From Selaginella moellendorffii (taxonomy: Eukaryota; Plantae; Lycopodiophyta): a stretch of 64,000 nt of DNA. The translations under genes were made by a program, and so were the position numbers. Below, in pieces: positions 18,352-63,494 of this stretch. The notes under the pieces are model-generated. The model did not search any database and was not told the DNA's origin. It was given only the letters and a program-made list of their open reading frames with translations. Location: assembly GCF_000143415.4 (NCBI RefSeq), contig NW_003314263.1:1242165-1306164 (forward strand), read 5' to 3'. The stretch's first letter is position 1, and each line of letters opens with the position of its first letter.

Positions 18352-18963
18352 CTAAGTCTGAGCAGCGGAGTTTAAGATGCTGGACATGGTTCCCAGAACC
18401 ATGAAAGCCAGCAAGGGACTCAAGTCGAGCGCGTTAAACACTGGCGGGATGATGTTGCGGAAGAGATTGAGGTATGGATCACACATATCCCTGATCGCCA
18501 TGAAGGGCTGCTTCTCCCAAGGGATGTTTGGAAACCAGCTGAGTAGCACCCGGATCATCATCACCGCGCTGTAGAGCTCCAGCCACTTGGCCATGCCCGA
18601 CGCCACCACTGTGAGTGGCGTAGAGACTGTGGACATGGACGCGAAGAAGAGAGGGCCGCCCTTGGTCGCCAAAAAGAATGGCACCGCCGCCGCGTTACTG
18701 CTGCTAATGGCGCTGCTGCTGCTGGCGGCGAGGCTTTGGAGAGCCGAGCTGGTGGCGTGAGCCATGGATTTGAGGAGCACTGGCAAGAATGCGAGCGGTG
18801 TCGGTGGAGGAGCTGTGTGGAGGAGCGATGATGCTGCCGCTGCCGCTGCCGCTGGAGAGAGTGCCGCTGGGATTATGTGTGGCCGGCGCCTGTTCCATTG
18901 GAGCTGTGGAGGGACTGGGGAGGCTACCTGGATGCGGAGGGAGGATGCCGACGCCATCGCCAT
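18352..18963 (-). CDS. YGGT-family chloroplast protein, YLMG1-like
   Basis: Ala/Ser-rich transit peptide, then WLELYSAVMMIRVLLSWFPNIPWEKQPFMAIRDMCDPYLNLFRNIIPPVFNALDLSPLLAF. Start placed at MAMASASS. Confidence 0.88.
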   Translation of the reverse strand: MAMASASSLRIQVASPVPPQLQWNRRRPHIIPAALSPAAAAAAASSLLHTAPPPTPLAFLPVLLKSMAHATSSALQSLAASSSSAISSSNAAAVPFFLATKGGPLFFASMSTVSTPLTVVASGMAKWLELYSAVMMIRVLLSWFPNIPWEKQPFMAIRDMCDPYLNLFRNIIPPVFNALDLSPLLAFMVLGTMSSILNSAAQT

Positions 18964-19416
18964 TGCTTTTGACCTAATCGAATATGCTTCGAAAATGGGC
19001 AATTTAAATTTTAAGGCATAAAGACACTAAGACATTTTGATAAATAAAAAATTTGAAGATATTCTTAAAACATGAATCCACTTTTTCTTTTATTTTTTAT
19101 TTTCTATTTTGTTTTGTCGGGCAAAATAAAGCAAGAAGTCATATGGTTGATGCTAAAGATGGGATGTCTCTTTGGGTATCTTGTGCCACGTTTATTGGGC
19201 TGTGGATGTTTTAGTTTTGATTATTTGCTTTAGGATAACTAAGTCTTCGTTTGCATGCAAACTATGTGCCTCGGAAAGAAATAAACACCAATACCTATCA
19301 AATATCCTTGAACTTTGTTAATGTCCCCTTAAGTTGGCTTTCATCTTTTAGCATAGAAATTCAGAAATTTTAAAATCCATGGCTCCCTTTAAAACCAAAG
19401 GAATGGAATCACTTAC

Positions 19417-19587: not shown

Positions 19588-19960
19588 CTGCGCGCTCTGG
19601 TCCTGGGAGAGAGTGCTTGAGACAGTGCTTGCAGGTGGCTACCGAGAGGACAATGCCCGAGGAGGAGCAGTCGAGTATCCATGTCGAGTTGAGGGGTGTT
19701 GCGTCTAGATTCTGCGTGGAGTGGAGCTGAAAAGTTTGCTGAGCAGATACTTCACCAACGCGTTTGGCTTGAGGAGCTCGCTAGCTGTCAAAGACATCAG
19801 TACTGTTGCTAACCTTGTCGAAAAAATAGTTTAGGAACGAAACGTAAGTTCCAGTTCCTCGTAGAAACAAGCTGGCGACGTGAGACAGAGATTTAACTTT
19901 TATGTTACCTGAAGATCTCGTGAAGTTTCCTGGTTCCTAGTTACCAAGGGGAACACAAAG

Positions 19961-21606
19961 CTACAAAGGAAAGTACCTCCCCAAAGCTTGCAGAAGCCTG
20001 GCGCGGTAGTTGCGTGGATGGATGATACAGTGTTCAAGAACACGCTTCCTGATGTCCTCCTCCGTCATGACGCATCCAAGGAGCTCCCGAATCCAATCCA
20101 TCACAAGACCTCGGATGATCCGAAAGTTGATTCGAATGTGTCTGTAGGCATTCCTCCGAGAAAACGTGGTAAGGTAGTCGATTACGGAAACAAAGATGTG
20201 CTCCTCATCGGTCTGGAAGACTAGAACCGAATAATCCGTGAGGCCCTGTCTCTGCAAAAAAAAAACAAGCAAAACAAGCAAAACAGTCGTAAATGAATCA
20301 AGCAAGGATGTTTTCCAGCTTACCTGGAGGAAGTGCGTGTCCCGCTCAATCAAACAAAACAGCATGCGGTGAGAGAAACTTGTCAGCAGCAAAGGCGTTG
20401 TGAAATAGGCATCGCTCTCTGGAACACTGTACTTGATGAACCCCTTGAGATCATGGTGTATCGTTGTGGCTTGAAGAAAGCTCCTGGGAGGATCTGTGGC
20501 CTCAATGACAAGGACGTTCAAACGTTCGCTCTCGCTGAAGGTCATCGGTGCGGGCCAGATCTATGACACGAAAAGCAATATGAGAAGTGCTTTCGAACTT
20601 TTTCAAGTGTTTATACCTCGTAAGCGCCCAGTATTATCGCGAACGATGTCTCCAGCTGCTGGGTGTACAGGAAGTAATCTTCTGCTATTCGTCGCAGCGC
20701 ACTCATATCACGGTGAGAAACCAGCTTCACGATGACTCGCTCGCTGGCAGTGGTGAAAAACTTCGCTCCACTCCTAGAGCTGGCCATCGTCCTCGGGCGT
20801 GCGGTGTTCAACGTTTCAACAAACTCCTTGTCATCCTTGAAGCCATGAACTTCCCGTAGAGTGCGAAACTGTGTGGGAAAGAGAACGTTGACGAATCCAT
20901 CGATGCCCCCGAACGAGTACTCTGGCTTGTCCCCAGGAACTTGGTGCGTAAGGTACTTCGTGAGAACGGGAAGCCACTGCGGTGGGGGAGTCTGAAAACG
21001 AAAGTTTACGTGAGCAGTGAGCAGTGAGTGAAGTTCCAAATCAAACCAAATGTACGCTGGTAGAGTTCTCGTTCACGATATTCTTCTGAAGGCGCTTCAT
21101 CGCGCGGATCTGTTTGGGGAACACAGCCGTGACGTTGCCACTGCAATCAGCATAGAAACGAATCCGCATAGGATCGGCATAAGAAATCACGGGAAAGCTT
21201 GCAATCTCGACGAGTTAAATCTCGAGAATCCGCGTTAGGACCGGGATAAGAAGCAAGAAACCACTGGAAAGCTTGCAATCGGGATAAGAAGCAAGAAGTC
21301 TGTGGAGAAACAAAGTAGAAACCATGAATCGGGACAGCTCGGGGTCTAGGAAACGAGAAAGCACTAGAAAGCTTGCAATCGGGACAGGAAACACGAAATC
21401 TCTGGAGAGACAAGCGTCGAGAATGCATAATCACCATGAATCGAGAGAGAATCGGCAAGAAAGCTTGCATACCTCGCCCGAGACGATGGATCATGACAGT
21501 ATCGCGTAGGCTCCCTGGCCATTGCCGCGTCGAATGCGACGCTGAGCAAGAATGGCGCAATCGCGACGCAGACGATCGCCATCGCGCAAACCATCGCCAG
21601 CGCCAT
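19961..21606 (-). CDS. Minimal FAB1/PIKfyve-like phosphatidylinositol-phosphate kinase domain protein with N-terminal hydrophobic signal, copy A (~373 aa)
   Basis: Predicted exons 21606-21473, 21140-21056, 20991-20617, 20560-20324, 20251-19961 (GT-AG, phases compatible). PIPK motifs in order: FPTQFRTLRE, SSRSGAKFF..SERVIVK, DLKG, DTHFL...TDYSVLV, VIDYL, IIHP.NYRARL...YF. Confidence 0.72.
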
Positions 21607-21748
21607 CGCTCCGCAACCAAGGCATGCAAAATAAAACCCAAATTTCAAACGATGGATGGTACAAGTTAGCGCCAAAACCCCAAACGTACGGAAATGGGCC
21701 AATGCTAAAATTAGTGGACGTTTTTAGGGTTCTTCGCGAGAGAGAGGG
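21607..21748. promoter_or_regulatory. Putative bidirectional promoter between the kinase-like and phosphatase-like genes
   Basis: Only 142 bp separate the divergent ATGs. Contains a site-II motif TGGGCC (21695-21700) and a telo-box-like TTAGGGTT. Confidence 0.5.
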
Positions 21749-23037
21749 ATGGATTCCAAGGTGCTACACCTTGTGCGCCATGGCCAGGCCTTCCACAACG
21801 TCCAAGGTGAGATTCTACTGCAAATGAGGAGCTCCTGGAAGATTTTCCTGGACGGGAGATGGCGGCGCCTCACGCTCAAGCACATCTTGAGGGCTTTTCG
21901 ATGCCTGTGGCTTCTCTTGTGCTGCATCGTTTCCCCAGCGCCTCCTCGTCCCTCCTCCTCCCCAGCTGCTGTGATGCCCATTTACTACGAGCACGCCGAC
22001 GCGAGCCTCACGGCTACTGGATGGGAACAAGTAAGTCCTTTCCTTTCCCTTTGCTCCATTCATTTGGTAAATGATCGATCGCTCTCCTTCAAGGCTGAGT
22101 TTCTTCACAGGGAATTCAGGATTTCCGGATTGAGAGACCGAGTGGAGCTTGTTGTGGTGTCGCCCTTGACTCGGTAGTGTGATTTCTCCTCTCGAGAACT
22201 CTTCTAAGTTTGCCTTCCAGGACGCTCCAAACTGCATCTGGGATCTTTGGAGGAGGGAATTTCACTGATACCACTGATCAACTAGCAGCTCCTCTGATGG
22301 TAGACAACGTTGGACGGTGTCCACGACCAGCCATCTCCAGTGCAAACTCCCCTCCTTTCGTAGCACTGGAGCTTTGCAGGGAGAAATTGGTATGTTGGCT
22401 CTCCCATATTTTTTCTCTCTGTCAATGTAGCTAGTTGACGCGAAGTTTTGATGAACAGGGTACCATGCCATGCGATCAGAGGAGTCCCAGGAGCAAATCC
22501 GAAATTCAGTTTCCAGGGATTGGCTTTTCGAACGTAAGGATCATTCGACTCGATCGAGTTGTGTGACTTGATCCAACTCTGTTTCTCTTCTCTATCAGAT
22601 CGAACAGGACCAGGACGAGCTGTGGAAGCCTGACAGAAGAGAACTAGAAGAGGAGCTCGACAAAAGGGCGAGAGCTTTTCTAGAATGGTACGTGGGCAGT
22701 CTGCGAAAGCTGTTGTAAGTTTCTGATCAAGCTTGCAGGCTATGGAGTCGTGGAGAGGAGGAGATTGCCGTCGTCTCCCACGCAGGCTTTCTGACCAACC
22801 TTGTGACAAAGTTTGGCAACGAAGCTGTGAACAAGACAGTGTAAGCGGCGTGTTTGGATGCTAGATTTGCTTGGTACTTACACTTGTGCGATTTAGGTTT
22901 GCGAACTGTGAGCTTCGTAGCGTGAGATTGAGGTGAGTCATCGTAGTTTTGTTCTCGAGACCTTAGATCTTGGCGTTTTTTTGCTCAGGAAAATAGTCAC
23001 GGGCTCGGACTATGCATTTGAGTTGACCGCAGCGTGA
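21749..23037 (+). CDS. Phosphoglycerate-mutase-like histidine phosphatase, copy A
   Basis: LHLVRHGQAFHN, DASLTATGWEQ, VVVSPLTRTLQTA, ELCREKLGTMPCDQR, EIAVVSHAGFL, FANCELRS. Multi-exon, frame intact to TGA 23035-23037. Confidence 0.85.
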
Positions 23038-23664
23038 ATCCATCCAAAGTGAGCCATGGATTCTAAAAGAAAATCTTCTTTTCCTAACTTTATATTGAGA
23101 ATCTAGCATCCTCGTCCCGCCAGGAAAATGCTCGGACTATGCATTTGAAGAGACTGCAGCGTGAATCCATCCAAAGCGAGCCATGGATTCTGAAAGAGTT
23201 CTTTTGCTAACTTCAAGCTAGAAGCTTGAAGTTATTATTCATGTAGTCAATCTTAAAACGTATCTATATTTAGCTAGGGCAAAGTTAATATAGCGGCAGA
23301 AAATAATTTAAAATAAATTTAAGGGAGGGGATATACCTTATCATGTAATAGGTAGAAAATAATTAAATAATTTACTATAACAACGATTGGTTTGTTTAAT
23401 AGTATTGTTATTCCTACTTATTAATCTAATTGATCAAATAAAAATTTATAATTATAAAGATGTTTATAATTTATAAACACAAGATTAAGATGGTAGAATA
23501 AAAAATAATATACTAGAAAGTATTTAAGAAATTTTATAAATTATAAACATAAATACAAGATTAATCTTAATAAATAACAACTGTTAGATGGTAAAATATC
23601 CTAGAATATTCAAGAATATTCTAGGTATATTCACTACCATCCCAAAAGCTCTGTTGGGCCAAGA

Positions 23665-24570
23665 TAAATAAATCTTCTTTTCTAATTTTAGAATGTTAGA
23701 AATTTTTATTGTATACAAGATTAAAATTATATAAACTTTGCTACTATTCATCTCTAGAGTAATGCACAATAATGCAATTAGAGAATAATGCATATGTTGG
23801 GGAAGTTAAAATCATTTTTCATCATCATGAAATTTAAATTTGAATTTGTTTTTATTGCCTTTCCAAAAAGGTACAAAACCCTAAACATATCCACAAGATT
23901 GGTGCCAACCTTTTAAAACAATTGAGTTTTCACAAAATCAAAGAATTATACCAAAGAATAATAGGTTTTATAACTGGTTTGGTGAAGTTATAATTTAATT
24001 GTGTACTGAGTTAACTTCTTTACTATCTGAATTGTAATGATGCCTTTAACATTCATAGTTTACTAAATAATAATAGAATTTCTATTATGTATACCCTTAT
24101 TGTCGTAATCTATATGATTACATAGTGTGATAAAATTATTATAAAACTATTGATTTTATATCAAATTATAATATGCAGAAAGATATAGCATACCTAAAAT
24201 AAATAAATCTTCTTTTCTAATTTTACAATTTTTAAATTTTAATTTTTATTGTATACAAAGTTAAATTTATCTAAAATTTTCTACTATTCATCTCCAAATA
24301 AATGCACAATAATGCAAATAGATAATAATGCAAGTGTTCAGGAAGATAAGATCATTTGTTATCATCATTAAATTTGGATTTGATGTTTTTATTGCTTTTA
24401 TAAAAATGTTCACAACCCTAAACACATCTACAGGATTGCTGCCATGCTTTAAAAGCAATTGAGTTATCACAAAAACAAAGAATCATAGACTACCAATAAT
24501 AATAGGTTAGTTTGGAGAAATTATAATTTTAATTTATCTGAACTGTAATGATGCATAGTTTACTAATATG
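23665..24570 (+). repeat. Diverged AT-rich tandem duplication (~530 bp period); mirrored in the right arm
   Basis: AATAAATCTTCTTTTCTAATTTTA...CTACTATTCATCTC...AATGCACAATAATGCAA occurs at ~23665 and ~24200. Confidence 0.7.
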
Positions 24571-27500
24571 ATCTGAATTTCTTCTGGTTTTACATTTAGA
24601 AAACATACATAAGATGAATACATAACCAATTAGAAAAAAATGTGCATTCTTATTTAAAAACCTTTTCCCTTTATATTTGAACTTCTATATAATCATCTTT
24701 TGAATTGTTCTTTTTTGTTGCATATAACTCACTATACATTTTTGCAAATTCATGCCCTCATGAATAAAAGTTAATAACCATAACTTTCCTATAGCAAGGA
24801 TCCATGCTCTGCTGGGAATGTATCTTGGTTGGCAAATTTATTATGGAACTTAAGATGGTTTAGAATATTTGTCATTTGGATATCATGCCATGAGAGATAG
24901 CAATGAGTAGTTTATTTCAAAGATAAACAATTATTAAATTTTCCATACATTCTATATATTTTATAGACCAGTTTTAAGTCATTTTAAAATTGTAGTGTGG
25001 AGTCAATTAAATATAAGTATGTAGCATCAAGTGTTTTTAATTTACATTTTGCTGTTAATTGTGTCAAACTTTTTTCTTTAGTTGTGTGTGTATAAAGGAC
25101 CTAATACACCTAGCTTGGCTAGGTAATACACTAATTATAGTACTATAGCATATGGACCATCCATTCTTGTATATAAGTAGGGGTCTAAACCCCAATTAAT
25201 ATACCTATTTCTACATCCTGAGCACTCACAAGATAATTTTAAGGGAGAGGATATACCTTATCATGGAATAGGTAGAAAATAATTAAATAATTTACTATGC
25301 TTTACATGTAACAATGATTGGTTTGTTTAATAGTAATGTTATTCCTATAAAATTTATAATTATAAATATGTTTATATATTATAAACACAAGATTAATCTT
25401 ATTGCATATCAACCATTAGATGGTAAAATAAAAAAGAATATACTAGAAAGTGCTGAAGAATGTTTATAAATTATAAATACAAGATTAATTTAAATGAATA
25501 ACAACCAAAACTATATAAATATAAATTTGAAGGTATAAGGAATATACTTTGTATAGTTTGGTATATATATTAATATGTGCGAACTAGATAAAAAAGTTCC
25601 TTTTCAAATATCACAAAGACCTTTCCACACATATCTCACCTCACTTCCATCAAATCTGTCTACAACCCATCTAAACATGATTATCCTTTTGAACAACACC
25701 TTCAATCTCTCCATCCCTTTATGTAGTTAGCTTAGGGTATAAAACATAAGATCCTAATAAAGTGAATTTTGCAAGCTCTTCCTTGATCAACCATTTCTGT
25801 GACCTTTTGCATCCTCTTTTAGATCCTATGTAAAGAATCAACTCCTTGAGATATTGTAAACTAAATGATCCCTCGAAATCATGATCAAAATGATAAAGAA
25901 TTTGCTAGATGAAACCAAGTTTAGGACTGAGTTGAAGACTATGTCTGAAACCCTGAGACTTGAGATCGGGTCCAAGATCAAGTCCAAAATTAAATCCAAG
26001 ATTGAGTCTAAATACTAATATATGTTATAGAGTGAAAGGGGGCATTATAGATGTTCCAAAAGTATAATAAAAATAGTGAAGATAAAGACTTAGCTTTGAA
26101 ATGAACTCTCTAGTGCCCCTCAAAAAAGTGCTTAAGAGTAAGTCTTATTCCCAAAAGGGAAACCAACTACATTGCTCATAACTTAGGTGGAATGGTGCCT
26201 CATTTGAGTACCATATGGCTCATTGGTCTTTGCCCCTTTCTAGGGGATTGAATAATAAGGGTACCCATACCATGCTATTAAGCCACAATGTTTCCCCTTG
26301 GGATCTTAAACTAAAAAATGCATATGAGATTTGAGATTGAAAAGGTTTTATGAATAAATCTTATTGTACTAATGGATGTCAAAAACTTGAAAATTTGGTG
26401 TTCTTAGTTGTTTGTGTCTATGGGGAGTGTAGTTGAACTTTAAGTTTAGTTTACTCTAGGAAAGGAAATTGGGAGAGAGTTTGGGAAATTGGAAAAGGAA
26501 AATTTGTGGTTTACATTTTGTTAATGATTTATATTAAAACATTTTACCTTACAAGTAAAGATCACATTAACCTTTCCAAAACAAGATTGAAGTCTCTCCA
26601 AACTCTTGTACACAAGCACCAAATTCTTCTCACTCCATTTACTAATACCAGAATAGAAAGATTGATTGATCCTTCCATTGTATTTTGTACCGAAGTCCCA
26701 TAATTGATCCTTCCATTATATTCCATATGAATTCAATTTTTAGGGGTAAAAATATATCTTGTTCAAGGGTATATTATATTTTAAATAGCCACTAATTAAT
26801 GGGAATCGGGCTCACTCCAATACCATATATAATGCATCTTATCTCTCCCCTTAAGCTAATTGGAAAAGAGGCAATTGCTTAATAAAAAATCTTTTAATGG
26901 CCCTATTTATTCCCCAAGGTTTTAAGGATCTACAATGACAATATATTTAAATTTCATCCCATAATCATATGCACTACAATGGCATAGGTAAGCTTCTTTC
27001 ATTTTTTTCAATTTTTCATTTCACTTAGCTGTAGATTAAATAAGTTCTTGTAAAGGAGCTTAGACTACATTTATTTTTTGGGTTATTCTCTTGTTTTTAA
27101 GGAGGCTCAAATCTTAAGCCAAGTAAAGTAGGCTAAACTCAACAAGTTGATTACAAGGATATTTAAATTTGCTACTAGAGTGGGAGTGGGAAGCACTTTT
27201 TTAAGGGGCACTAGAGAGTTCCTTTAAAGACTATCTTCACTATCTTTATTATATTTTTGGAACATCTTGCAATGCCCCCTTTCTTTAGGATATTATCACT
27301 TTGGGCTTTTACCCCACAACCTATATTAATATTTGGACTCTGACTTAGTCTCAAACTTGATTTTAAACTTGGTCTTGGACCCAATCTCGGATTAGAGTCT
27401 CGAACGTAGTCTCAAACTTGGTCTTAACCTTGGTTTCATCTAATAAATTCTATATGGTTTTTATCATGATTTTGAGGGATCTTTTAGTCTCCACACCCCA

Positions 27501-27736: not shown

Positions 27737-30700
27737 TGTAAGCGACTAAATTTTCCATTCTACTTTAGTCACTTAACCACACCTTCGACCACTTGGAGGA
27801 GTCTCATTCACAACCTCCATCAGTCCAATTCAGGACTTGGGACTTGCTAGCCCCAAGAATGGCATCCATGCCACTCAACACTTGCACCTGGTCCAAGTGC
27901 TCCACGTGTCCGGTCCCAAGACCGACACCCAAAGGTACCACTGACATCTCGGCCCGTTACGCTAAGGCCATGCCCACCTTTGCTGCACTAGTGGTCCAAT
28001 ACCACTTGCATCACCATCCCGTCTCTCCAAGACTGGGCCCTCTGTCCACGAGTGGTCATCCTAGATCCACTCCTTAGCATCCTTAGGATGCCCACAGACC
28101 TAGGGAATCGCCTTCCCCAAAGTCCCTTTGTCAGTTCCTACCAAGTCCCTTTCTGCCCCTGGCCGTGTTTGCCAACACCGCCACTGGATCGAGGCCCACA
28201 GGCCCGACCACTAAGTCCCATGGTCCTCTGGGACTTCCTCACCACACGACTGTGTCCTTGGTCACTACCCCAGAGGACTGCTCCTCTTCCTTTCCACAAT
28301 CTAGGCCTTTGGGACAACATTTTGGAACACCGTGGCCTTACGCAAGCCACCTGGGTACTCTCCCTGCCTTTCGCCTTTAGGTGCTCTAGCCATGGGCTTA
28401 GAGCGAGGTTCCATTGAGCCACGCCTGGTATCCAAGTAGGTAGTGCCACCCACACTTGGACTGGGAGCATCGGCCAGTCGATCTCCCGGGGGAACTAGAG
28501 CCGGCTCTTGAACACTTCACCAAGCCACCCCGCTTGTCGGTCCGTATTCACTCTAGTCTTGGACTTCCCAGTGGTCAGTTCATCACCCAACACTGGGTCT
28601 GGCCTTCCTGGGCCAAACTGGCCTTTCCTGGCCAAACTGGCTCCACTGCAGTCCTCCCCCCTTACTATACTTTTGGAGCTCACCAAACCCCCCAGGGTCT
28701 GGGAGACGAACGCTTTGGGCTTTCACCCTCTCAGACTCGAACTCGGACTCGGACTCGGACTCGGACTCGGACTCGGACTCGGAATCGGACTCGGACTCGG
28801 GCTCGGTCTCAGCCTTGGCCTCGGTCTCAGTCTCGGTCCCGGTCTCGGTCCCGGTCTCAGTCCCGGTCTCGGTCTCGGTCTCGGTCCCGGTCTCGGTCTC
28901 GACCTCGGACTCCATCTCGGGTCCTTCTCGGACTCCGTCTCGGCCCATCTCGGACTTCATCTCGGACTCCGTCTCGGTCCATCTCAGACTCCATCTCGGG
29001 TCCATCTCGGACTCCGTCTCGGTCCACCTCGAACTCCATCTCGGACTCCATCTCGGGTCCATCTCGGACTCCATCTCGGACTCCATCTCGGGTCCATCTC
29101 GGACTCCGTCTTGGTCCACCTCGGACTCCATCTCGGACTCCATCTCGGACTCCATCTCGGACTCCATCTCGGGTCCATCTCGGACTCCGTCTCGGTCCAC
29201 CTCGGACTCCACTTCGGGTCCATCTCGGACTCCATATCGGACTCCACTTCGGACTCCATATCGGACTCCACTTCAGGTCCATCTCGGACTCCAACTAGGG
29301 TCCGTCTCGGACTCCATCTCGGACACTTCCACGTGTCATATGTTGGTCCTTTTTGGGTCCCTTTTTGGAGCCTTGCTTATTGCTCGCTCCTTGAGCACTT
29401 TGTTGGGAGTTCCACTCCTGCTCTCGACCTTCCAAGTCAGAGCTTTTAGTCCAAATGTGTTACACTCGTTTGGGCTTTCGCTTCGGCCACTACCACGTGG
29501 CACCCTTTCTGGCTCCACTTTGGGGCCTAGGGATTTTGTGTCTCACAACTCCACCACCCATAGACGAAGCTCAATGTCCTCATCGAACGGTAAACCATTT
29601 TATAAAGTAACACCCGCATGTGTTACCATTTCCATCCTTGGCACCTAGCCAACATTTGTCAATGGTTTGAAATTGAAGGCTCACTATGCCTTCTCCATAT
29701 TTGTCAATGGTTTGACACCAAAGGCTCCCCATGCCTTGCCCATCCTATAAGGAGGATAGTCTCTCCAACTTAGAGACTCACTTGACCACCTAGGGTGGGT
29801 TGCTCCTTTTTATTGGTTCAGTTCTCGCTAAACCTGTTAGAGACACCCTCTCTAACTCAATTCCACTACTCATTCTTGAGTAGTCACCGATTCCATTGAT
29901 CTACCTTTGCACTTTGGAACGTTTACTTTTGACTTCTTGAAGTCAATTTCCTAGGTGTCTCCGACACCTTGCCTTGCACATTTTGTGCAACTCCACTTCC
30001 TCTCCTAAGAAGTTCTCTACTCGAGGGCACCCTCATCCTCTTTTCTATTTTTGTGCCACCATTGGCATTACGTTCCATTTATTATTATTTGTGCTAGGGC
30101 TGTCCACGGCCCTATCTTTTGGCTACTTTGCCGCTCCTCACTTGGAGCTTTTTCTTCGCCAAATCGGAGCACTTGGGAATCTATCCTTGGAAGTCCACTT
30201 CCCTTCCCACAATCCGTTAGCACCCAACACGTTAGTGTTCTTGGCTTAACTTTGCCATTTGGTTTCTTTCCCATGATTCCCATGGCTCTTTTCTTAGCCA
30301 TTAGTCTTTTGCTCCTATCCTTGATTGTTGTACCTAACAACATCGGATCATTACCTCCATTCTCGAGGTATCCTCTTGATTCCATAGCAAAGACTTTACT
30401 TTGCCAAGTCCAAAGGGTGCTCACCCCTAGTACGTCACTTTAGCATTTCCTGCTATGGGCTTTATCCATGGCCCAACTTTTGAGACCCTCCCTTGGATCT
30501 TTCATAGAGGCCACTTTCCTCGGACTTACTATGCCATAGCCGTGACATAGCTCATTTCCCATAGGTGCTCTTCCCACTTGGTCACCTTGACCAAGCCACA
30601 CCATTATCAGTAGTTCAAATCAACACTTTGAACTAGGAATCATATCCTTTAACCCAAACAAAGACCTTGTCCGTGTTCAACCACAAGATCAACTAGTGAT

Positions 30701-33700
30701 CTCATCTTGACCCCTTAATAGGTCTACCAATAGGGACTAGGTCTTCCAGACCTTACTAAGTTGTTGACTATGACCCCGGGGGCATCCCCCACACTTGGCG
30801 GTGCGCCCAAGCTAGCCCTTCCGGCCAAGGATCCATAGCAACTGAGACTGGGTGTCCCCATCTCATTCACCACGTCCTTGGTGCCTTTTGCACCAAAATG
30901 TTCAAGTTAGATATGCCGAGCTTTCACTCTAAGCAATCTAACCGTGCATCACGACTCTGAGGCATCCCTCGCTTGGCGGTGTGCCCAAACCAGTCTCCAC
31001 ACTGAGAGTCCATGACCACCGAAAAATGAGTGTCCTCATATTCCAAACCATCACCACGCCCTAGTGAATTGGGACTCGAACCCAAGCACTAGAGAGTCGG
31101 GACTCGAACCCAACCTCCGTATATGCATCTACGGACGGCATCACCCAAGATGCCTAGCGTGACTCCCCATGCCGGTGCACCAACTTATACTTAAAGCACG
31201 CTACAGATCACAGCTTAGGAACCTAGTTCCTCCACACTGCCAAGTCCTCTCACTTGACAAGTCTGTGATCATGCATGGACTCCTCCATACTTGGCCTCAT
31301 GGCCCACCCCTTTTGAAGTTATCACCTTCAACTAGGGTATTTGTTCCCCTGACTTGCCAATCTCACTTTGGCAAGCCCTCCGACCACTGTAACATGGTTC
31401 CTACACAAGCTTGAAAGCCCTTGATCATCGACTTTCATTCAAAGCCCTCTCTTTGAACACTCGGGAACTACTTCCCTAACCTTGATAGCCTTGCCTCATG
31501 GCAAGCTTCAAGACCACGCTTCTGTTGCGCCACTCTGATTTCGCGCATTCCTTGAACCATTTATGCTTGGCCTTTCTAGGTACTAAGCTACCTAGAATCA
31601 TCTTTGGGAACCTTGAAGGAACTCTGTCCTTTAGCTTGCTAAGGCCTCCCTTTTTGCAAACTTTCCAATTACCATATAGTCTAACATGGATAATTCCATA
31701 TTTTAGACTCTCCATGGCATCACGGTTGCTAGCGGCAACACCCTCGAGCCCCCACTTGATTCTCCACTCCCAGCTGGCATAACCAACCTTGGTTATGCTC
31801 TTCGATTCCTATGGTTCGGTTCTACCCCTTTACTTCTTGCTTTTGGCTTCACACGTTTCCTTTAGTCATTCTCCTCCAGACCAGGAGGATATCTTTGCAC
31901 TTTCTATCATGCCTTAGCAAGTATTCTTAGGGATGAACCTACTCGATAGCCTAGGGAGTGGTTCCTCAATCCAGGTATGCTCACCCTATAATCCCACACA
32001 CCAAGATTACATTGTTGCTTATGGGCCTTTACATGCCCATCGCTAGCCTTGCCAAAATTCCATTTTTGGCTTTGTCCAATTCGAGTAGACAGTCTTCTCC
32101 TGTCTCCGCCACCTTGGACATTTGGATAGCACCTTCTATCCATCATTTGCTAGGGACTTATTCCCTTGGGCCTTATCTATTGCCCTCGCGACATCAAACA
32201 CCACCTCCTGGTGTTCTAAAGTGTTCGGGTGTCCAATGATGGCTTCCTTGACAATGAGTATTTCCTTTCATGACATTGACTTACTATATCGCAACATAAG
32301 CAACTTATCCCCCGTAAGGGTATATCCAACTTCCTTATGCCATTAAGAAGGCTTGGGTAGCTACCTTCTACCCGTTTAACCAATTATTTTGCACCTCTTG
32401 CTTAGTTGCCTCATAGTTGTCAAGTCCTACAACTCATTGCTGGTGCTTCCACACCTCCATCATTATCTGGGTCACCACACTCCAACCGCATGCTCTGCAA
32501 CTTAGGCTATGCCATTCCCATTTCCATTGGGATTCCTTTGGCAAGGGGTTCTCATGAACCCACCAACATAGCCTCAAGGTATCACACCTTGGCACATTTG
32601 GTGTCTCCACACCATCGGCTCCACGAGCCTACCTTTATGACACTTCTTCTTTGTGTCTATGTCTTTTCCAAGACCAATACCACTCTTTTTCATGCCAACC
32701 ATCTGTTAGCATTACACCATAGAGGTCACACACAACTTTGTTTCAAAGTTGTTTTCTTTTGGGAACACCCTTCCCACGACTTTAGCATGGCACATTTTGC
32801 CATCGATGAGATACCCTCTGTTCTCATCCTTGGATTTTATGATCCCCCCCATCCTTCGTGGGGTACCACACACCTCAGTCCAAATGCTTCTATCAATCCT
32901 TTAGGATTATTCCTTGACTCTATTGGAGTCATCCAGCTTTTTGGACTTGGTTAATCCACAGACCCGTAAGGTCTTACTTGTGGGGCACTTGCTCACTGGA
33001 ATACACTTCTTGCATTCACGTCCTACTCACAAGGACTATTTTCACAAGTGTTACTCTGACACTTGATTTTGTTCTCTGGGGCAACCTTTGCCCCTTAGGA
33101 CTACTTGTCCATGTGATGAGAATACCAACTCGTCTCTAAGTACACCCCCCAACTCCTTGGGTTGTTCCAGCATTTATTAAAGGTAGCCCCGGCTACCATT
33201 TCAAAGACTTGAGTCCTCTTCCGTATTTGACCTCCCATGGTCATCACTTCAAGTCTCACATTCATGAGCACTAACCTCAACTATATGAGGATAACCATAT
33301 ACTGTTCCCAAGATCCCAAAGTCGTTCCATTACTGGTCCCTATTCTATCCACCACATCGCGCCCAAGTTCATGCATGAACTCGAGTGGAGAGCCATGTCC
33401 TCTCGCCGTGCTACTCCTCAAGGATAGGCCCACTCCTAGGACCTTCCGATGCCAATATCAATGGTGATATACTTGAGCACCAATAAAAGTCGGACTAAGG
33501 AACAGCTCTGATACCAAGTTGTAAGCGACTAAATTTTCCATTCTACTTTAGTCACTTAACCACACCTTCGACCACTTGGAGGAGTCTCATTCACAACCTC
33601 CATCAGTCCAATTCAGGACTTGGGACTTGCTAGCCCCAAGAATGGCATCCATGCCACTCAACACTTGCACCTGGTCCAAGTGCTCCACGTGTCCGGTCCC

Positions 33701-47500: not shown

Positions 47501-49499
47501 CCACAGCTCGTCCTGGTCCTGTTCGATCTGATAGAGAAGAGAAACAGAGTTGGATCAAGTCACACAACTCGATCGAGTCGAATGATCCTTACGTTCGAAA
47601 AGCCAATCCCTGGAAACTGAATTTCGGATTTGCTCCTGGGACTCCTCTGATCGCATGGCATGGTACCCTGTTCATCAAAACTTCGCGTCAACTAGCTACA
47701 TTGACAGAGAGAAAAAATATGGGAGAGCCAACATACCAATTTCTCCCTGCAAAGCTCCAGTGCTACGAAAGGAGGGGAGTTTGCACTGGAGATGGCTGGT
47801 CGTGGACACCGTCCAACGTTGTCTACCATCAGAGGAGCTGCTAGTTGATCAGTGGTATCAGTGAAATTCCCTCCTCCAAAGATCCCAGATGCAGTTTGGA
47901 GCGTCCTGGAAGGCAAACTTAGAAGAGTTCTCGAGAGGAGAAATCACACTACCGAGTCAAGGGCGACACCACAACAAGCTCCACTCGGTCTCTCAATCCG
48001 GAAATCCTGAATTCCCTGTGAAGAAACTCAGCCTTGAAGGAGAGCGATCGATCATTTACCAAATGAATGGAGCAAAGGGAAAGGAAAGGACTTACTTGTT
48101 CCCATCCAGTAGCCGTGAGGCTCGCGTCGGCGTGCTCGTAGTAAATGGGCATCACAGCAGCTGGGGAGGAGGAGGGACGAGGAGGCGCTGGGGAAACGAT
48201 GCAGCACAAGAGAAGCCACAGGCATCGAAAAGCCCTCAAGATGTGCTTGAGCGTGAGGCGCCGCCATCTCCCGTCCAGGAAAATCTTCCAGGAGCTCCTC
48301 ATTTGCAGTAGAATCTCACCTTGGACGTTGTGGAAGGCCTGGCCATGGCGCACAAGGTGTAGCACCTTGGAATCCATCCCTCTCTCTCGCGAAGAACCCT
48401 AAAAACGTCCACTAATTTTAGCATTGGCCCATTTCCGTACGTTTGGGGTTTTGGCGCTAACTTGTACCATCCATCGTTTGAAATTTGGGTTTTATTTTGC
48501 ATGCCTTGGTTGCGGAGCGATGGCGCTGGCGATGGTTTGCGCGATGGCGATCGTCTGCGTCGCGATTGCGCCATTCTTGCTCAGCGTCGCATTCGACGCG
48601 GCAATGGCCAGGGAGCCTACGCGATACTGTCATGATCCATCGTCTCGGGCGAGGTATGCAAGCTTTCTTGCCGATTCTCTCTCGATTCATGGTGATTATG
48701 CATTCTCGACGCTTGTCTCTCCAGAGATTTCGTGTTTCCTGTCCCGATTGCAAGCTTTCTAGTGCTTTCTCGTTTCCTAGACCCCGAGCTGTCCCGATTC
48801 ATGGTTTCTACTTTGTTTCTCCACAGACTTCTTGCTTCTTATCCCGATTGCAAGCTTTCCAGTGGTTTCTTGCTTCTTATCCCGGTCCTAACGCGGATTC
48901 TCGAGATTTAACTCGTCGAGATTGCAAGCTTTCCCGTGATTTCTTATGCCGATCCTATGCGGATTCGTTTCTATGCTGATTGCAGTGGCAACGTCACGGC
49001 TGTGTTCCCCAAACAGATCCGCGCGATGAAGCGCCTTCAGAAGAATATCGTGAACGAGAACTCTACCAGCGTACATTTGGTTTGATTTGGAACTTCACTC
49101 ACTGCTCACTGCTCACGTAAACTTTCGTTTTCAGACTCCCCCACCGCAGTGGCTTCCCGTTCTCACGAAGTACCTTACGCACCAAGTTCCTGGGGACAAG
49201 CCAGAGTACTCGTTCGGGGGCATCGATGGATTCGTCAACGTTCTCTTTCCCACACAGTTTCGCACTCTACGGGAAGTTCATGGCTTCAAGGATGACAAGG
49301 AGTTTGTTGAAACGTTGAACACCGCACGCCCGAGGACGATGGCCAGCTCTAGGAGTGGAGCGAAGTTTTTCACCACTGCCAGCGAGCGAGTCATCGTGAA
49401 GCTGGTTTCTCACCGTGATATGAGTGCGCTGCGACGAATAGCAGAAGATTACTTCCTGTACACCCAGCAGCTGGAGACATCGTTCGCGATAATACTGGG
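44565..49499 (-). repeat. Right arm of the inverted repeat (partner 20627-25582)
   Basis: Reverse complement of the left arm. Identity ends abruptly at 49499, near the end of kinase exon 3. Confidence 0.95.
47089..48377 (-). CDS. Phosphoglycerate-mutase-like histidine phosphatase, copy B
   Basis: Mirror copy of 21749-23037 with identical translated ORFs in the track. Confidence 0.85.
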
Positions 49500-50147
49500 A
49501 GCGTACGAGGTAAATTTATAAGCACCTCGAGAGCAATTCTCATATTGCTTTTCGTGTCATAGATCTGGACCGCACCGAGGAAGGGCGAGAGCGAACTTTC
49601 CAACGTCCTTGTCATTGAAGCCACAGATCCTCCCAGGAGCTTTCTTCAAGCCACAACGATGCACCATGATCTCAAGGGGTTTGTACAGTTCTGGGTGCCC
49701 GACAGTGACGCATACTTCACCACGCCATTCTCGCTCACAAGTTTCTCTCACCGCAAGCTGTTCTGTCTTGTCGAGCGGGACACGTACTTCCTCCAGGTAA
49801 TCTGGCTGGAAAACATCCGTGCTTGATTCATGTTGCGATTGTTTGGCGTTTTGCAGAGACAGGGGCTCACGGATTACTCGGTGTTGGTGTTCCAGACCGA
49901 TGAGGAGCACATCTTTGTTTCCCTGATTGATTACTTGTCGATTTACTCCTGGAAGACTGCCTACGGCCATGCTCAAATCAATCTAAGGATAATCAAGCGC
50001 CGTTTGCTGGATTGGATTCGCGTGCGCATGGGATGCATCATTACAGAGGAGATCATCAAGAAGAGAATGCAGGAGGACTGTGTGATACACCCCTGTAGCT
50101 ACCGAGCGAGACTGTTGAGAGGTATGGCAAGGTACTTCCCTTTGTAG
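48520..50147 (+). CDS. FAB1-like PIP-kinase domain protein, copy B (chimeric: 5' part identical to A, 3' part diverged; ~372 aa)
   Basis: Predicted exons 48520-48653, 48986-49070, 49135-49509, 49563-49796, 49857-50147. Frame intact; retains VIVK, DLKG, DYSVL and LIDYL. Confidence 0.72.
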
Positions 50148-53100: not shown

Positions 53101-54621
53101 GATAATAAACACTCTTTCCACTAATCAAATGTAACAATTTCAAACTAAAGCATTGGGTGTATAAAGTTCAAAGAGAAAACAATGATGAAATAAGTAACAT
53201 TCAATTCCTTGCAAAATATGCAAAAATTTATTTTTTCCAAGGTTTATTTTTTTTATTCCAAGTAAACAATGACAACAACCAACATTGCTACGTGATAAAG
53301 ATGTCCACTAAAGGACTAAAAAGTGTGGTTGACTTAGTTGACAAATGCAAAAAGTAAAAACTCTCAACTAATCTTGGATACATTTCAACTTTAATTATTG
53401 TGTACGTGAATAGGCAACAATAGGAACTTATATATATGACCACTAAGTAAAGAAACTTCTTCAAAAATGAAAAATTAATCATATTAAAACATTTATAAAT
53501 TGCATAAGTTATTGATTATTGCAACATGTGAGTTTAAAGTGGAGGATTGTGTGTTTCAGCATTTGTTTTAAATACTTCTCAATAACATGTACAAGCGCAT
53601 AATAGGTTTTGTACCTACTTTTCATGGTTTCATGGCTGATGAGGTTGACACTAATTGGAATATTGTTTAAAAAGTATATTTTGGAGGCCACAAAAAACTA
53701 AAAAAAGAGGACTTATATGTTTTCCACTTTCAGTAAAGTCTCTAAATGCACAAAAAAAATTACATTACACATGACTATCAACAAGAATACTTTAACTTGT
53801 GTCAACAGTGGTAATAGGTTGAGAGTTAGGAAGAGGCATAAGTTTATTTCAATAAGATCTAACAGTGGTAAGAAAGAAAGACAATTCAAAATGACAAAAA
53901 AATCCTTTATTTGTGGATTTCATGGTGGCAAGATAGAGAAATTTCTTTTTTAAGGTTTGGACTTGAATAGTGTTCCACAAATTTTTTTTTACCAATGCAT
54001 GTTATGATAACCTATTAGAAGCCCTACTCTAGTGCATTATATATAAATTATGTTTAGAGGGAAGATACATAGGATTGGGTCCAAGATTGTAGGTGTTTTA
54101 CACAAGGAAACATAATACACCAAAAAGTGTTAAAAAATGAGTAGCAAACATAACAAATTTCAACAAAAGTGTATCATGTTAGATTAGAGTGGCTACAGTG
54201 GAGACTACAAGACAACTTACAAGAAGAGTCAAGCAACAGATTTATATATTGTTGCCATTGATGATAACACATGCTAAAATTCATCAACAATAATGTGCCG
54301 ATTTGTGATTTTTCATTAAGAAAGAATTTGAACTTTGATGACACAAAATAACCATAACGACATATATGAGTAGTGAACTTCATGACTTTGTTGTGTCAAG
54401 ACCCCCAACAAGATCAAGACTGGAAAATGCTAAAGACAAAGAGAAAAAGCTAGTGAAAACAAAGAAGAGGCCTTAGACTGGTGTTGATTCAGATTGTGGA
54501 GAAAGGGAACAAGGCTAACCTATATATACTATAGGTTGATGAAGCTCCACCACTCTTGGATCGAGGACGGCCTAAATACAGCTGAGGTCGAGGAGGCGCC
54601 ACATCATCATCAGGAATGTGG

Positions 54622-54767
54622 CTCGAGACTCAGGAATCGGGAAGTGTCTCGAGACTCAGGAATCGGGAAGTGTCTCGAGAGTCAGGAATAGGGAAGTGTC
54701 TCGAGACTCAGGAATCGGGAAGTGTCTCGAGAGTCAGGAATAGGGAAGTGTCTCGAGAGTCAGGAAT
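54622..54767 (+). repeat. 26-bp tandem repeat (~5.5 copies) in the LTR U3 region; also at 59888-60033
   Basis: CTCGAGA(C/G)TCAGGAAT(C/A)GGGAAGTGT units start at 54622, 54648, 54674, 54700, 54726 and 54752. Confidence 0.9.
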
Positions 54768-54843
54768 GTGGTCTGCAGGTCAGGAATCCGGCGAGAGTCA
54801 GGAATGTGGCAAGAATTGGGGGATTCCTGATAGCACCCCCTCC

Positions 54844-61848: not shown

Positions 61849-63494
61849 CTACAAAGGAAAGTACCTCCCCAAAGCTTGCAGAAGCCTGGCGCGGTAGTTG
61901 CGTGGATGGATGATACAGTGTTCAAGAACACGCTTCCTGATGTCCTCCTCCGTCATGACGCATCCAAGGAGCTCCCGAATCCAATCCATCACAAGACCTC
62001 GGATGATCCGAAAGTTGATTCGAATGTGTCTGTAGGCATTCCTCCGAGAAAACGTGGTAAGGTAGTCGATTACGGAAACAAAGATGTGCTCCTCATCGGT
62101 CTGGAAGACTAGAACCGAATAATCCGTGAGGCCCTGTCTCTGCAAAAAAAAAACAAGCAAAACAAGCAAAACAGTCGTAAATGAATCAAGCAAGGATGTT
62201 TTCCAGCTTACCTGGAGGAAGTGCGTGTCCCGCTCAATCAAACAAAACAGCATGCGGTGAGAGAAACTTGTCAGCAGCAAAGGCGTTGTGAAATAGGCAT
62301 CGCTCTCTGGAACACTGTACTTGATGAACCCCTTGAGATCATGGTGTATCGTTGTGGCTTGAAGAAAGCTCCTGGGAGGATCTGTGGCCTCAATGACAAG
62401 GACGTTCAAACGTTCGCTCTCGCTGAAGGTCATCGGTGCGGGCCAGATCTATGACACGAAAAGCAATATGAGAAGTGCTTTCGAACTTTTTCAAGTGTTT
62501 ATACCTCGTAAGCGCCCAGTATTATCGCGAACGATGTCTCCAGCTGCTGGGTGTACAGGAAGTAATCTTCTGCTATTCGTCGCAGCGCACTCATATCACG
62601 GTGAGAAACCAGCTTCACGATGACTCGCTCGCTGGCAGTGGTGAAAAACTTCGCTCCACTCCTAGAGCTGGCCATCGTCCTCGGGCGTGCGGTGTTCAAC
62701 GTTTCAACAAACTCCTTGTCATCCTTGAAGCCATGAACTTCCCGTAGAGTGCGAAACTGTGTGGGAAAGAGAACGTTGACGAATCCATCGATGCCCCCGA
62801 ACGAGTACTCTGGCTTGTCCCCAGGAACTTGGTGCGTAAGGTACTTCGTGAGAACGGGAAGCCACTGCGGTGGGGGAGTCTGAAAACGAAAGTTTACGTG
62901 AGCAGTGAGCAGTGAGTGAAGTTCCAAATCAAACCAAATGTACGCTGGTAGAGTTCTCGTTCACGATATTCTTCTGAAGGCGCTTCATCGCGCGGATCTG
63001 TTTGGGGAACACAGCCGTGACGTTGCCACTGCAATCAGCATAGAAACGAATCCGCATAGGATCGGCATAAGAAATCACGGGAAAGCTTGCAATCTCGACG
63101 AGTTAAATCTCGAGAATCCGCGTTAGGACCGGGATAAGAAGCAAGAAACCACTGGAAAGCTTGCAATCGGGATAAGAAGCAAGAAGTCTGTGGAGAAACA
63201 AAGTAGAAACCATGAATCGGGACAGCTCGGGGTCTAGGAAACGAGAAAGCACTAGAAAGCTTGCAATCGGGACAGGAAACACGAAATCTCTGGAGAGACA
63301 AGCGTCGAGAATGCATAATCACCATGAATCGAGAGAGAATCGGCAAGAAAGCTTGCATACCTCGCCCGAGACGATGGATCATGACAGTATCGCGTAGGCT
63401 CCCTGGCCATTGCCGCGTCGAATGCGACGCTGAGCAAGAATGGCGCAATCGCGACGCAGACGATCGCCATCGCGCAAACCATCGCCAGCGCCAT
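61849..63494 (-). CDS. FAB1-like PIP-kinase domain protein, copy C (same as A)
   Basis: Same translated ORFs as copy A. Confidence 0.72.

What the first reader, a model, noticed from the sequence alone, without database searches (positions are those of the whole stretch)
19961..21606. Stand-alone FAB1/PIKfyve-like kinase domain behind a signal-peptide-like N-terminus
Seen: MALAMVCAMAIVCVAIAPFLLSVAFDAAMA-REP (hydrophobic core plus an AxA-type cleavage motif), N-glycosylation sequons NVT and NST in exon 2, then a compact PIPK domain with the catalytic K (VIVK), DLKG, DYS and IDY residues. Established: plant PIPKs are cytosolic and carry MORN repeats (type I/II) or FYVE/CCT domains (FAB1); none are visible here. 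Inference: a secreted/lumenal or membrane-anchored kinase, perhaps with a non-canonical substrate.
Basis: partly seen in the sequence, partly recalled or inferred. Interest (0 to 1): 0.78.

Follow-up and report, generated by a model that had tools for sequence, protein, structure and literature searches.

The report
Mini FAB1-type lipid kinase, hydrophobic start
A spikemoss (Selaginella moellendorffii) gene, present three times in this window, is transcribed and under selection; it encodes only the catalytic domain of a FAB1/PIKfyve-type lipid kinase behind a hydrophobic, signal-like start, and whether that start sends the enzyme into or onto a membrane is still untested.

Summary
A five-exon minus-strand gene (21606..19961) encodes 376 aa. 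Residues 1-25 are uncharged and hydrophobic, followed by a 70-aa linker and a compact PIPK core with all catalytic motifs.

- **Splicing:** spliced contigs of one public run join exon 1 to exon 2 and confirm all four introns. Exon 2 is 9 nt longer than first read. The first 50 nt of the CDS, including the ATG, are not covered.
- **Kinase type:** the public model of this copy (SELMODRAFT_404219, D8QUN0) passes Pfam PIP5K at 49 bits. It matches the PIKfyve kinase domain (E 4e-14) far better than PIP4K or PIP5K. No FYVE, CCT or MORN domain is present.
- **Copies:** the window holds three copies. A equals B. C is letter-identical to A through exon 3 and then diverged, with dN/dS about 0.2 and motifs intact, so the kinase is under constraint.
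- **Relatives:** none outside this species turned up in three large protein searches.

"Secreted or lumenal" is not shown. The two sequons are at chance level, there is no basic n-region, and the hydrophobic start lies on a hexanucleotide microsatellite. I could not run a signal-peptide predictor.

The scan already found copy B (s1-349022) with the same reading. Moderately interesting: a new variant of a known kind.

The parts
21473..21606 (-). Exon 1 (ATG 21606; 44 codons + 2 nt). Codons 1-25 (21532-21606) are the uncharged hydrophobic segment. Small-residue -3/-1 sites follow codons 24 (SVA|F) and 30 (AMA|R).
   Evidence: The joint 21140|21473 is seen in the X1 contig, which covers 21473-21556 only.
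21567..21609 (.). Hexanucleotide microsatellite (period 6 x5.8; period 18 x2.1) underlying the first ~13 codons
21141..21472 (-). Intron 1 (GT..AG, 332 nt) with three exact copies of GATTGCAAGCTTTC
21047..21140 (-). Exon 2 (linker; sequons NVT and NST).
   Evidence: joint 20991|21047; matches public models P0007/P0001
20617..20991 (-). Exon 3: PIPK N-lobe (G-loop SRSGAKF, catalytic Lys in VIVK)
   Evidence: Pfam PIP5K 26.4 bits on this exon alone; PDB PIP4K2A 1.8e-6, PIKfyve 3.7e-5; joints
20324..20560 (-). Exon 4: DLKG catalytic motif region
19961..20251 (-). Exon 5: DYS, IDY (Mg-binding Asp), activation loop, C-terminal P-x-x-YR-x-R...RYF motif, TAG stop 19963-19961
   Evidence: The X1 contig is continuous from 20251 to 19907, across the stop.
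61849..63494 (-). Copy B: protein identical to copy A (public model SELMODRAFT_404224)
48520..50147 (+). Copy C: identical to A through exon 3, then 77% (exon 4) and 66% (exon 5) amino-acid identity (public model SELMODRAFT_404223)
20627..24239 (.). Tract of 3,613 bp letter-identical between copy A and inverted copy C. Its edge at 20626/20627 lies inside the gene, at the end of exon 3.
21746..21950 (+). Head-to-head neighbour (histidine-phosphatase/PGAM-like, RHG motif). Its read starts pile up at 21746/21749, 140 nt from the kinase ATG.

Best explanation
**Shown**
- This is a real, spliced, transcribed gene of Selaginella moellendorffii (public model SELMODRAFT_404219).
- It encodes a 376-aa protein that keeps only the catalytic core of a type III (FAB1/PIKfyve-type) phosphatidylinositol-phosphate kinase. 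The ATP-binding, catalytic and Mg-binding motifs are all intact.
- The C-lobe has been under purifying selection since an old duplication.

**Inferred**
- The gene arose by partial duplication of a FAB1-type kinase region. The fragment landed next to the promoter of a PGAM-like gene and gained two new 5' exons. The first of these is built on a GCGATG-type microsatellite.
- The resulting 25-residue hydrophobic N-terminus takes over the membrane-recruiting role that the FYVE and regulatory regions play in FAB1. It takes the nascent chain to the ER and acts as an uncleaved N-terminal anchor.
- The kinase domain therefore stays on the cytosolic face of an endomembrane. There it phosphorylates a phosphoinositide, most likely PI3P to PI(3,5)P2 or PI to PI5P.
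- The side of the membrane is the weakest step. I lean only slightly towards cytosolic.
For: **Gene model and RNA**
- Four GT-AG joints, including exon 1 to exon 2, appear in the spliced contigs of run X1. Depth is zero in all four introns. Run X3, from a second study, covers exons 3-4 and has a loose end matching exon 5.

**Identity**
- The exon pieces match EFJ36322/D8QUN0 residues 1-372 exactly.

**PIPK membership and type**
- Pfam PIP5K scores 49 bits against a cutoff of 27.
- PIKfyve 7k2v scores E 4.2e-14 (55.7 bits), PIP4K2A 6e-7 and PIP5K1A 5e-4.
- The best non-self hit among 1.84 billion representatives is the kinase exon of a FYVE-CCT-PIPK gene. That gene aligns over residues 110-372.
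- The DYS-to-IDY spacing is short, and the C-terminal motif is in register with PIKfyve.
- Protein-language-model neighbours are PIP5K clusters, score 0.96.

**Constraint**
- Copy A against copy C on exons 4-5 gives dN/dS 0.18-0.22 at dS about 0.8. Frames, splice sites and the DLKG, DYS and IDY motifs are all kept.
- Copy A against the copy on scaffold GL377662 gives 3 non-synonymous and 6 synonymous changes.

**Hydrophobic start**
- 25 uncharged residues give a crude membrane-insertion energy sum of -1.8 kcal/mol over 19 aa.
- A length of 24-25 aa is typical of membrane anchors rather than of signal-peptide h-regions (established knowledge).

**Precedent**
- Membrane-embedded PIPKs with a cytosolic kinase domain are known: type IV and GPCR-PIPKs (PMC3823935, PMC5784254).
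Against: - The charge balance around the hydrophobic core favours translocation of the C-terminal side. The free N-terminus counts +1, and the 15 residues after the core are net -1. This is unlike the strongly basic stretch that follows P450-type anchors.
- A Pro at position 18, followed by SVA|F or AMA|R, looks like a cleavable signal peptide.
- The ATG and the first 50 nt of the CDS are not covered by RNA. A start further downstream, at Met29, would remove the hydrophobic segment.
- The allele or paralogue on the other scaffold has Glu at position 17 in the core. That raises the crude insertion energy to +0.8.
- Expression is very low in two deep RNA-seq runs.
- No enzymatic or localisation data exist.
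- The 3D model failed (pLDDT 41.8).
Confidence: 0.4

Rival explanations
1. The N-terminus is a cleaved secretory signal peptide, and the PIPK-fold domain enters the ER lumen, the secretory pathway or the apoplast. It may be N-glycosylated at N47/N70 and may act on a non-canonical lumenal substrate.
For: - A hydrophobic core is followed by Pro18 and by -3/-1 small-residue sites (SVA|F, AMA|R). The flank charge difference favours a translocated C-terminal side.
- The A17E variant leaves a 15-residue h-region, which is enough for a signal peptide but poor for a stable anchor.
- Exon 1 is joined to the kinase exons in RNA.
- Both sequons lie just behind the putative cleavage site.
Against: - Two sequons against 1.3 expected by chance.
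- There is no basic n-region, and the h-region is unusually long if read as 2-25.
- No PIPK-family enzyme is known to work in the lumen, and its lipid substrates sit on the cytosolic leaflet (established knowledge).
- The catalytic and activation-loop architecture is that of an ordinary type III PIPK.
- The ATG is not covered by RNA.
- No predictor could be run.
Confidence: 0.25
2. The hydrophobic N-terminus is an incidental product of a young, microsatellite-derived first exon, or translation starts at Met29. The protein would then be a soluble, cytosolic 'mini-FAB1' kinase, possibly recruited by partners or acting as a regulator of canonical FAB1.
For: - The first ~13 codons sit on a period-6 tandem repeat, and all three frames are open there.
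- Exons 1-2 have no homologue anywhere.
- The A17E change suggests weak constraint on the core.
- The RNA contig stops at 21556, short of the ATG.
- An out-of-frame upstream ATG lies at 21625.
Against: - The ATG at 21606 is the first in-frame ATG after an in-frame stop. It has G at -3 and G at +4.
- All four public models start there.
- A 25-residue uncharged N-terminus, if translated, would hardly be ignored by SRP (established knowledge).
- Exon 1 is otherwise identical in all copies, although gene conversion makes this uninformative.
Confidence: 0.22
3. The copies are decaying gene fragments, FAB1 3' pieces carried along by segmental duplication. They would be transcribed at noise level and have no protein function.
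For: - There are multiple copies in a repeat-rich region.
- Depth is near zero in the two raw RNA-seq runs.
- There are no orthologues elsewhere.
Against: - All copies keep open frames, splice sites and every catalytic motif.
- dN/dS is about 0.2 over dS about 0.8 between A and C.
- The transcript in X1 is precisely spliced.
Confidence: 0.08

Closest known systems
FAB1 / PIKfyve (type III PIPK; PtdIns3P 5-kinase), e.g. human PIKfyve kinase domain in PDB 7k2v and Arabidopsis FAB1A-D
   Same: - The catalytic core is most similar to this class: 55.7 bits against 32 (PIP4K) and 22 (PIP5K).
- It shares the short spacer between the DYS and IDY motifs and the C-terminal P-x-x-YR-x-R...YF ending.
- The G-loop, catalytic Lys, DLKG and Mg-binding Asp are all kept.
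   Different: - It is 376 aa instead of roughly 1,400-2,100.
- It has no FYVE domain, no CCT/Cpn60_TCP1 domain and no conserved middle region. Arabidopsis FAB1C/D lack only FYVE (PMC6439278).
- It has a hydrophobic N-terminus, which FAB1 proteins do not have.
- Identity is only about 26-38% to any FAB1 kinase domain.
- It is restricted to S. moellendorffii in the databases searched.
Type IV transmembrane PIPKs / GPCR-PIPKs (Dictyostelium RpkA, oomycete GKs, ciliate TtPIPK2)
   Same: A PIPK catalytic domain is attached directly to a membrane-spanning segment rather than recruited by a lipid-binding domain (PMC3823935, PMC5784254, PMC3206951).
   Different: - Those proteins have seven helices N-terminal to a type I-like kinase domain.
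- Here there is one N-terminal hydrophobic segment at most, the kinase is type III-like, and the organism is a land plant.
Plant type I/II PIP5Ks (MORN-PIPKs)
   Same: The same Pfam family, PF01504.
   Different: - There are no MORN repeats.
- Similarity to type I kinase domains is much weaker.
- The long insert between DYS and IID is missing.
Secreted kinases of the animal secretory pathway (Fam20C, VLK, Fjx1), as a functional analogy only (own knowledge)
   Same: A signal sequence in front of a kinase domain.
   Different: - The fold family is unrelated.
- There is no evidence here for lumenal location.
- No plant example is known.

Membership tests
PIPK superfamily (Pfam PF01504 PIP5K) | Score above Pfam's gathering threshold | tested here: met
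   49.0 bits against a cutoff of 27 on P0007, which equals copy A over residues 1-372. Exon 3 alone scores 26.4 bits.
PIPK superfamily (Pfam PF01504 PIP5K) | Gly-rich loop and ATP-binding Lys (G-x-S-G-x-x-F ... I-I-K) | tested here: met
   SRSGAKF 148-154 and VIVK with K165, aligned to PIP4K2A ARSGARF...IIK and PIKfyve GKSGAAF...ILK
PIPK superfamily (Pfam PF01504 PIP5K) | Catalytic DLKG(S), (M)DYS(L)L and Mg-binding IID motifs | tested here: met
   DLKG 238-241, DYS 286-288, IDY 304-306. All are kept in the diverged copy C.
PIPK superfamily (Pfam PF01504 PIP5K) | PIPK three-dimensional fold | tested here: inconclusive
   AlphaFold2 on a 6-row alignment gave mean pLDDT 41.8 (N-lobe 55-70, C-lobe below 50). 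No fold search was run on it.
PIPK superfamily (Pfam PF01504 PIP5K) | Lipid kinase activity | not testable with these tools
   Needs an enzyme assay
FAB1/PIKfyve (type III PIPK) orthologue | Kinase domain closer to type III than to types I/II | tested here: met
   7k2v 55.7 bits, PIP4K2A 32.2, PIP5K1A 22.5. The best database relative is the kinase exon of a FYVE-CCT-PIPK gene. No tree was built, because no FAB1 set was obtainable.
FAB1/PIKfyve (type III PIPK) orthologue | Chaperonin-like CCT (Cpn60_TCP1) domain and conserved middle region | tested here: not met
   Pfam finds only PF01504 in P0007, P0008, P0009 and P0001. The protein is 376 aa.
FAB1/PIKfyve (type III PIPK) orthologue | N-terminal FYVE domain (absent from some plant FAB1s) | tested here: not met
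   No FYVE hit. Exons 1-2 have no Pfam family.
Cleavable secretory signal peptide | Hydrophobic h-region | tested here: met
   25 uncharged residues, mean Kyte-Doolittle 2.74 over 19 aa. This is longer than usual for an h-region.
Cleavable secretory signal peptide | Positively charged n-region | tested here: not met
   There is no Lys or Arg before residue 31. This feature is weak in eukaryotes (own knowledge).
Cleavable secretory signal peptide | Small uncharged residues at -3/-1 after a helix breaker | tested here: met
   Pro18, then SVA|F (24/25) and AMA|R (30/31)
Cleavable secretory signal peptide | Call by a trained predictor (SignalP, Phobius, DeepTMHMM); experimental cleavage or glycosylation | not testable with these tools
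   No such tool is on hand
Cleavable secretory signal peptide | The codons are in the mRNA and the ATG is used | tested here: inconclusive
   The RNA contig covers 21473-21556 (codons ~18-45) joined to exon 2. The stretch 21557-21606, with the ATG, is not covered.
Type IV transmembrane / GPCR-PIPK | Seven-helix receptor part in front of the kinase | tested here: not met
   Only one hydrophobic segment, and 96 residues in total before the core

The most novel reading that the evidence does not exclude
A land plant makes a PIPK-fold kinase that is translocated into the secretory pathway through a cleaved signal and works in the lumen or apoplast on a non-phosphoinositide or lumenal inositol-containing substrate. 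This would be the first lumenal member of the PIPK family and the first secreted kinase of this kind in plants.
Probability: 0.2. Interest if true: 0.85.

Novelty: new variant of a known kind. Interest (0 to 1): 0.45.

Why it matters
FAB1/PIKfyve enzymes are large, tightly regulated proteins. Their kinase domain is brought to endosomes by FYVE and by scaffold interactions.

A naturally minimised type III kinase core that has stayed under selection would show how little of FAB1 is needed for a working enzyme. This one carries its own hydrophobic leader and lacks all regulatory parts.

- **If membrane-tethered:** it would be a constitutive way to make PI(3,5)P2 or PI5P at one particular membrane.
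- **If lumenal:** it would open a new compartment for this kinase family.

The locus is also a clean example of gene birth by partial duplication. The new gene uses a bidirectional promoter and a first exon born from a microsatellite, and it has a sharp gene-conversion boundary inside the coding region.

The limits are real. The gene is lineage-specific, weakly expressed, already present (uncharacterised) in public annotation, and without any functional data.

Tried and rejected
- **Word search with exons 4-5.** I used the stop-free stretch read through intron 4 (199 aa). It gave no hit at E<=0.001, and the length window hides proteins above 348 aa.
- **Word searches with the public model P0001 and with alignment A2.** These found only the species' own paralogues and one metagenomic PIPK fragment.
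- **Exhaustive representatives search with exon 3.** It returned six hits. Two of them (P0002, P0003) proved to be spurious summed matches to repeat proteins: an alphavirus-E2-like repeat and an fn3/cellulase protein.
- **Structure prediction on alignment A2.** Mean pLDDT was 41.8, so I rejected it as a basis for any fold search. I left the second fold job unused, because a richer alignment (A3), built from exon-sized fragments of other PIPK genes, was visibly misaligned.
- **Literature.** There were no papers for the locus tags or UniProt ids, and none joining Selaginella with PIPK terms.
- **Retro-copy or DNA origin of the spliced contigs.** I rejected this. Depth is zero in all four introns and in the flanks of X1, and no intronless copy lies in the window.
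- **Transposon capture.** I rejected this as well. The duplicated block carries the neighbouring PGAM-like gene, and the other scaffold shares gene order with the YggT, LOB and PPR genes.

**No joined model.** Exons were searched one by one by reference. Full-length work used the public model P0007 residues 1-372, which the exon pieces match exactly. Only inside two scripts were exon codons strung together, to count substitutions.

Full report
**What is there**

On the minus strand between 21606 and 19961 lies a five-exon gene with GT-AG introns and consistent frames. The quoted N-terminus, the two sequons and the motifs are all present at the stated places. The motifs are VIVK (K165), DLKG (238-241), DYS (286-288) and IDY (304-306).

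Exon pieces were searched one by one by reference. I did not type or search a joined model. The public model EFJ36322 (SELMODRAFT_404219, UniProt D8QUN0, 'PIPK domain-containing protein', Selaginella moellendorffii) came back from the searches. Its residues 1-372 are identical to the exon pieces. I used it, by id, for all full-length work.

**RNA evidence**

Logan contigs of run X1 lie on the stretch as spliced pieces. Their joints are 21140|21473, 20991|21047, 20560|20617 and 20251|20324, and depth is zero in every intron.

- Exon 1 is therefore joined to the kinase exons.
- **Correction 1:** exon 2 ends at 21047, not 21056, which adds Val-His-Leu.
- **Correction 2:** the transcript runs unspliced from 20251 to 19907, through the TAG at 19963-19961. 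The true C-terminus is ...GRYFPL. The tails of the public models are spliced from a GT near 19975 and are not supported. The PIKfyve and protist FAB1 proteins also end just after the matching ...YF motif.
- Run X3, from another study, covers exons 3 and 4 and has a loose end that matches exon 5.
- Two deep raw RNA-seq runs (X14, X15) show almost nothing on the kinase. The head-to-head neighbour stands at depth 100-150 in the same runs.
- **Caveat:** the X1 contig stops at 21556, so the first 50 nt of the CDS, including the ATG, are not shown to be transcribed.

The ATG at 21606 is the first in-frame ATG after an in-frame stop and has G at -3 and +4. An out-of-frame ATG lies 19 nt upstream. The neighbour's read starts pile up at 21746/21749, which leaves only about 140 nt for the kinase promoter and 5'UTR.

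**What the protein is**

- Pfam finds only PF01504 (49 bits; cutoff 27), with no FYVE, Cpn60_TCP1 or MORN domain.
- Against all solved structures the best match is the PIKfyve kinase domain, 7k2v, at E 4.2e-14 (55.7 bits) over residues 114-312. PIP4K2A follows at 6e-7 and PIP5K1A at 5e-4.
- Exon 5 alone aligns in register with PIKfyve at DYS...IDY and at the C-terminal P-x-x-YR-x-R...YF motif.
- The exhaustive search of 1.84 billion representatives with exon 3 returned only the protein's own cluster, two spurious repeat proteins and three weak PIPK fragments.
- The best of those fragments (38% identity) is the kinase exon of a FYVE-CCT-PIPK (FAB1) gene of an unidentified protist. That gene aligns over residues 110-372 at E 1.5e-14.
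- Language-model neighbours are PIP5K clusters.
- The AlphaFold model was too poor to use, with mean pLDDT 41.8. The fold claim therefore rests on sequence.

The protein is a FAB1-derived catalytic core, not a FAB1 orthologue. It lacks the defining non-catalytic regions.

**Copies and selection**

The window holds three copies.

- **Copy A** is this finding.
- **Copy B** (63494..61849, minus strand) encodes the same protein.
- **Copy C** (48520..50147, plus strand) lies in the other arm of an inverted repeat.

A and C are letter-identical for 3,613 bp (A 20627-24239). Identity falls abruptly to 66-88% at 20626, inside the gene at the end of exon 3. The natural reading is an old duplication whose inner part has been homogenised by arm-to-arm conversion.

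The unconverted exons 4-5 give dN 0.15-0.17, dS 0.77-0.86 and dN/dS 0.18-0.22. Frames, splice sites and the DLKG, DYS and IDY motifs are all kept.

A fourth copy lies on scaffold GL377662, with the same neighbours (His_Phos_1, YggT, LOB, PPR), and is probably the other haplotype. It differs from A by 3 non-synonymous and 6 synonymous changes. The kinase is thus under constraint. It is not a decaying fragment.

**The N-terminus**

Residues 1-25 carry no charged or strongly polar residue. The mean Kyte-Doolittle value is 2.74 over 19 aa, and a crude sum of insertion energies is -1.8 kcal/mol. If translated, such a segment would engage the ER targeting machinery (established knowledge).

*Features of a cleavable signal*
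- Pro18, then SVA|F and AMA|R.
- A flank charge balance of +1 before the core and -1 after it, which favours translocation of the C-terminal side.

*Features against a classical signal*
- No basic n-region.
- A core of 24-25 residues, which is anchor-like.

*Neutral or cautionary points*
- The two sequons are no more than chance gives (1.3 expected).
- The first ~13 codons lie on a period-6 microsatellite.
- Exons 1-2 have no homologue anywhere.
- The only amino-acid change in exon 1 between copies is Ala17 to Glu, in the middle of the core.

No trained predictor was on hand. The side of the membrane, and indeed the use of the segment, stay open.

**Most likely mechanism**

- *Shown:* an intact, constrained, transcribed type III PIPK core without regulatory parts.
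- *Inferred:* it arose by partial duplication of a FAB1-type gene next to the promoter of the PGAM-like gene, with new 5' exons.
- *Inferred:* the hydrophobic leader replaces FYVE or scaffold recruitment by direct membrane delivery.

| Reading | Odds |
|---|---|
| N-terminal anchor with the kinase on the cytosolic face | 0.40 |
| Incidental or bypassed leader, giving a soluble mini-FAB1 | 0.22 |
| No function | 0.08 |

**Comparison and novelty**

The closest known relatives are the kinase domains of FAB1/PIKfyve. Arabidopsis FAB1C/D lack FYVE but keep the rest of the protein (PMC6439278). Transmembrane PIPKs exist, but they have seven helices and a type I-like core.

I found no paper on these loci. 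The genes are in public annotation as uncharacterised proteins. The scan has already reported copy B in this same window with the same reading (s1-349022). My work agrees with that report and adds the following:

- the RNA joints;
- the corrected exon 2 and C-terminus;
- the uncovered ATG;
- the three-copy structure with its conversion boundary;
- the dN/dS test;
- the chance level of the sequons;
- the microsatellite origin of the leader;
- the A17E variant.

**Verdict:** a real gene and a new variant of a known kind, with moderate interest (0.45). It would be high only if the lumenal reading proves true.

Noticed in passing
window 19953-25582 and 50155-44565 (inverted); identical tract 20627-24239: This is a large inverted repeat whose arms each carry a kinase copy and a PGAM-like gene. 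The arms are letter-identical for 3,613 bp. The edge of that tract lies inside the kinase gene at the end of exon 3, which looks like arm-to-arm gene conversion over an older duplication.
   Followed up: yes
window 19907-19975 and public models EFJ36322, EFJ36324, EFJ35903, EFJ09532: All four public gene models splice at a GT just before the natural stop into non-homologous tails of 380-525 aa. The RNA contig instead reads straight through the TAG, so the annotated C-termini look wrong.
   Followed up: yes
window 21567-21609: The start of the coding sequence is a hexanucleotide tandem repeat (period 6 x5.8; period 18 x2.1). All three frames of this strand are open across it.
   Followed up: partly
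window 21193-21380 (and 48746-48933, 63081-63268): Intron 1 holds three exact copies of GATTGCAAGCTTTC spaced 74-100 bp apart. The window has 9 copies against 0.07 expected. Their meaning is unknown.
   Followed up: partly
window 21746-21950 (+): The neighbouring histidine-phosphatase/PGAM-like gene is well expressed, with sharp read starts at 21746/21749. About 10% of reads carry other letters at 21757, 21787, 21805, 21884 and 21886, probably from paralogous or allelic copies.
   Followed up: no
L002:1908-5783 (Logan SRR24111733 contig): A FYVE-CCT-PIPK (FAB1) gene lies in one reading frame interrupted by in-frame stop codons. This suggests a protist with a reassigned stop codon, such as a ciliate.
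   Followed up: no
window 54394-54830 and 59660-60096: A 437-bp direct repeat at 99.8% identity, 5.3 kb apart, looks like the LTR pair of a young retrotransposon.
   Followed up: no
window 27737-29547 and 33520-35380: Two blocks 93% alike carry internal tandem arrays of roughly 80-120 bp and strong negative GC skew. They are flanked by very AT-rich stretches (23-31% GC at 24-26 kb and 38-46 kb).
   Followed up: no
window 18352-19002 (-): The downstream neighbour is a YggT/CCB3-family membrane protein gene. The same gene order (His_Phos_1, PIPK, YggT, LOB, PPR) is found on scaffold GL377662.
   Followed up: partly
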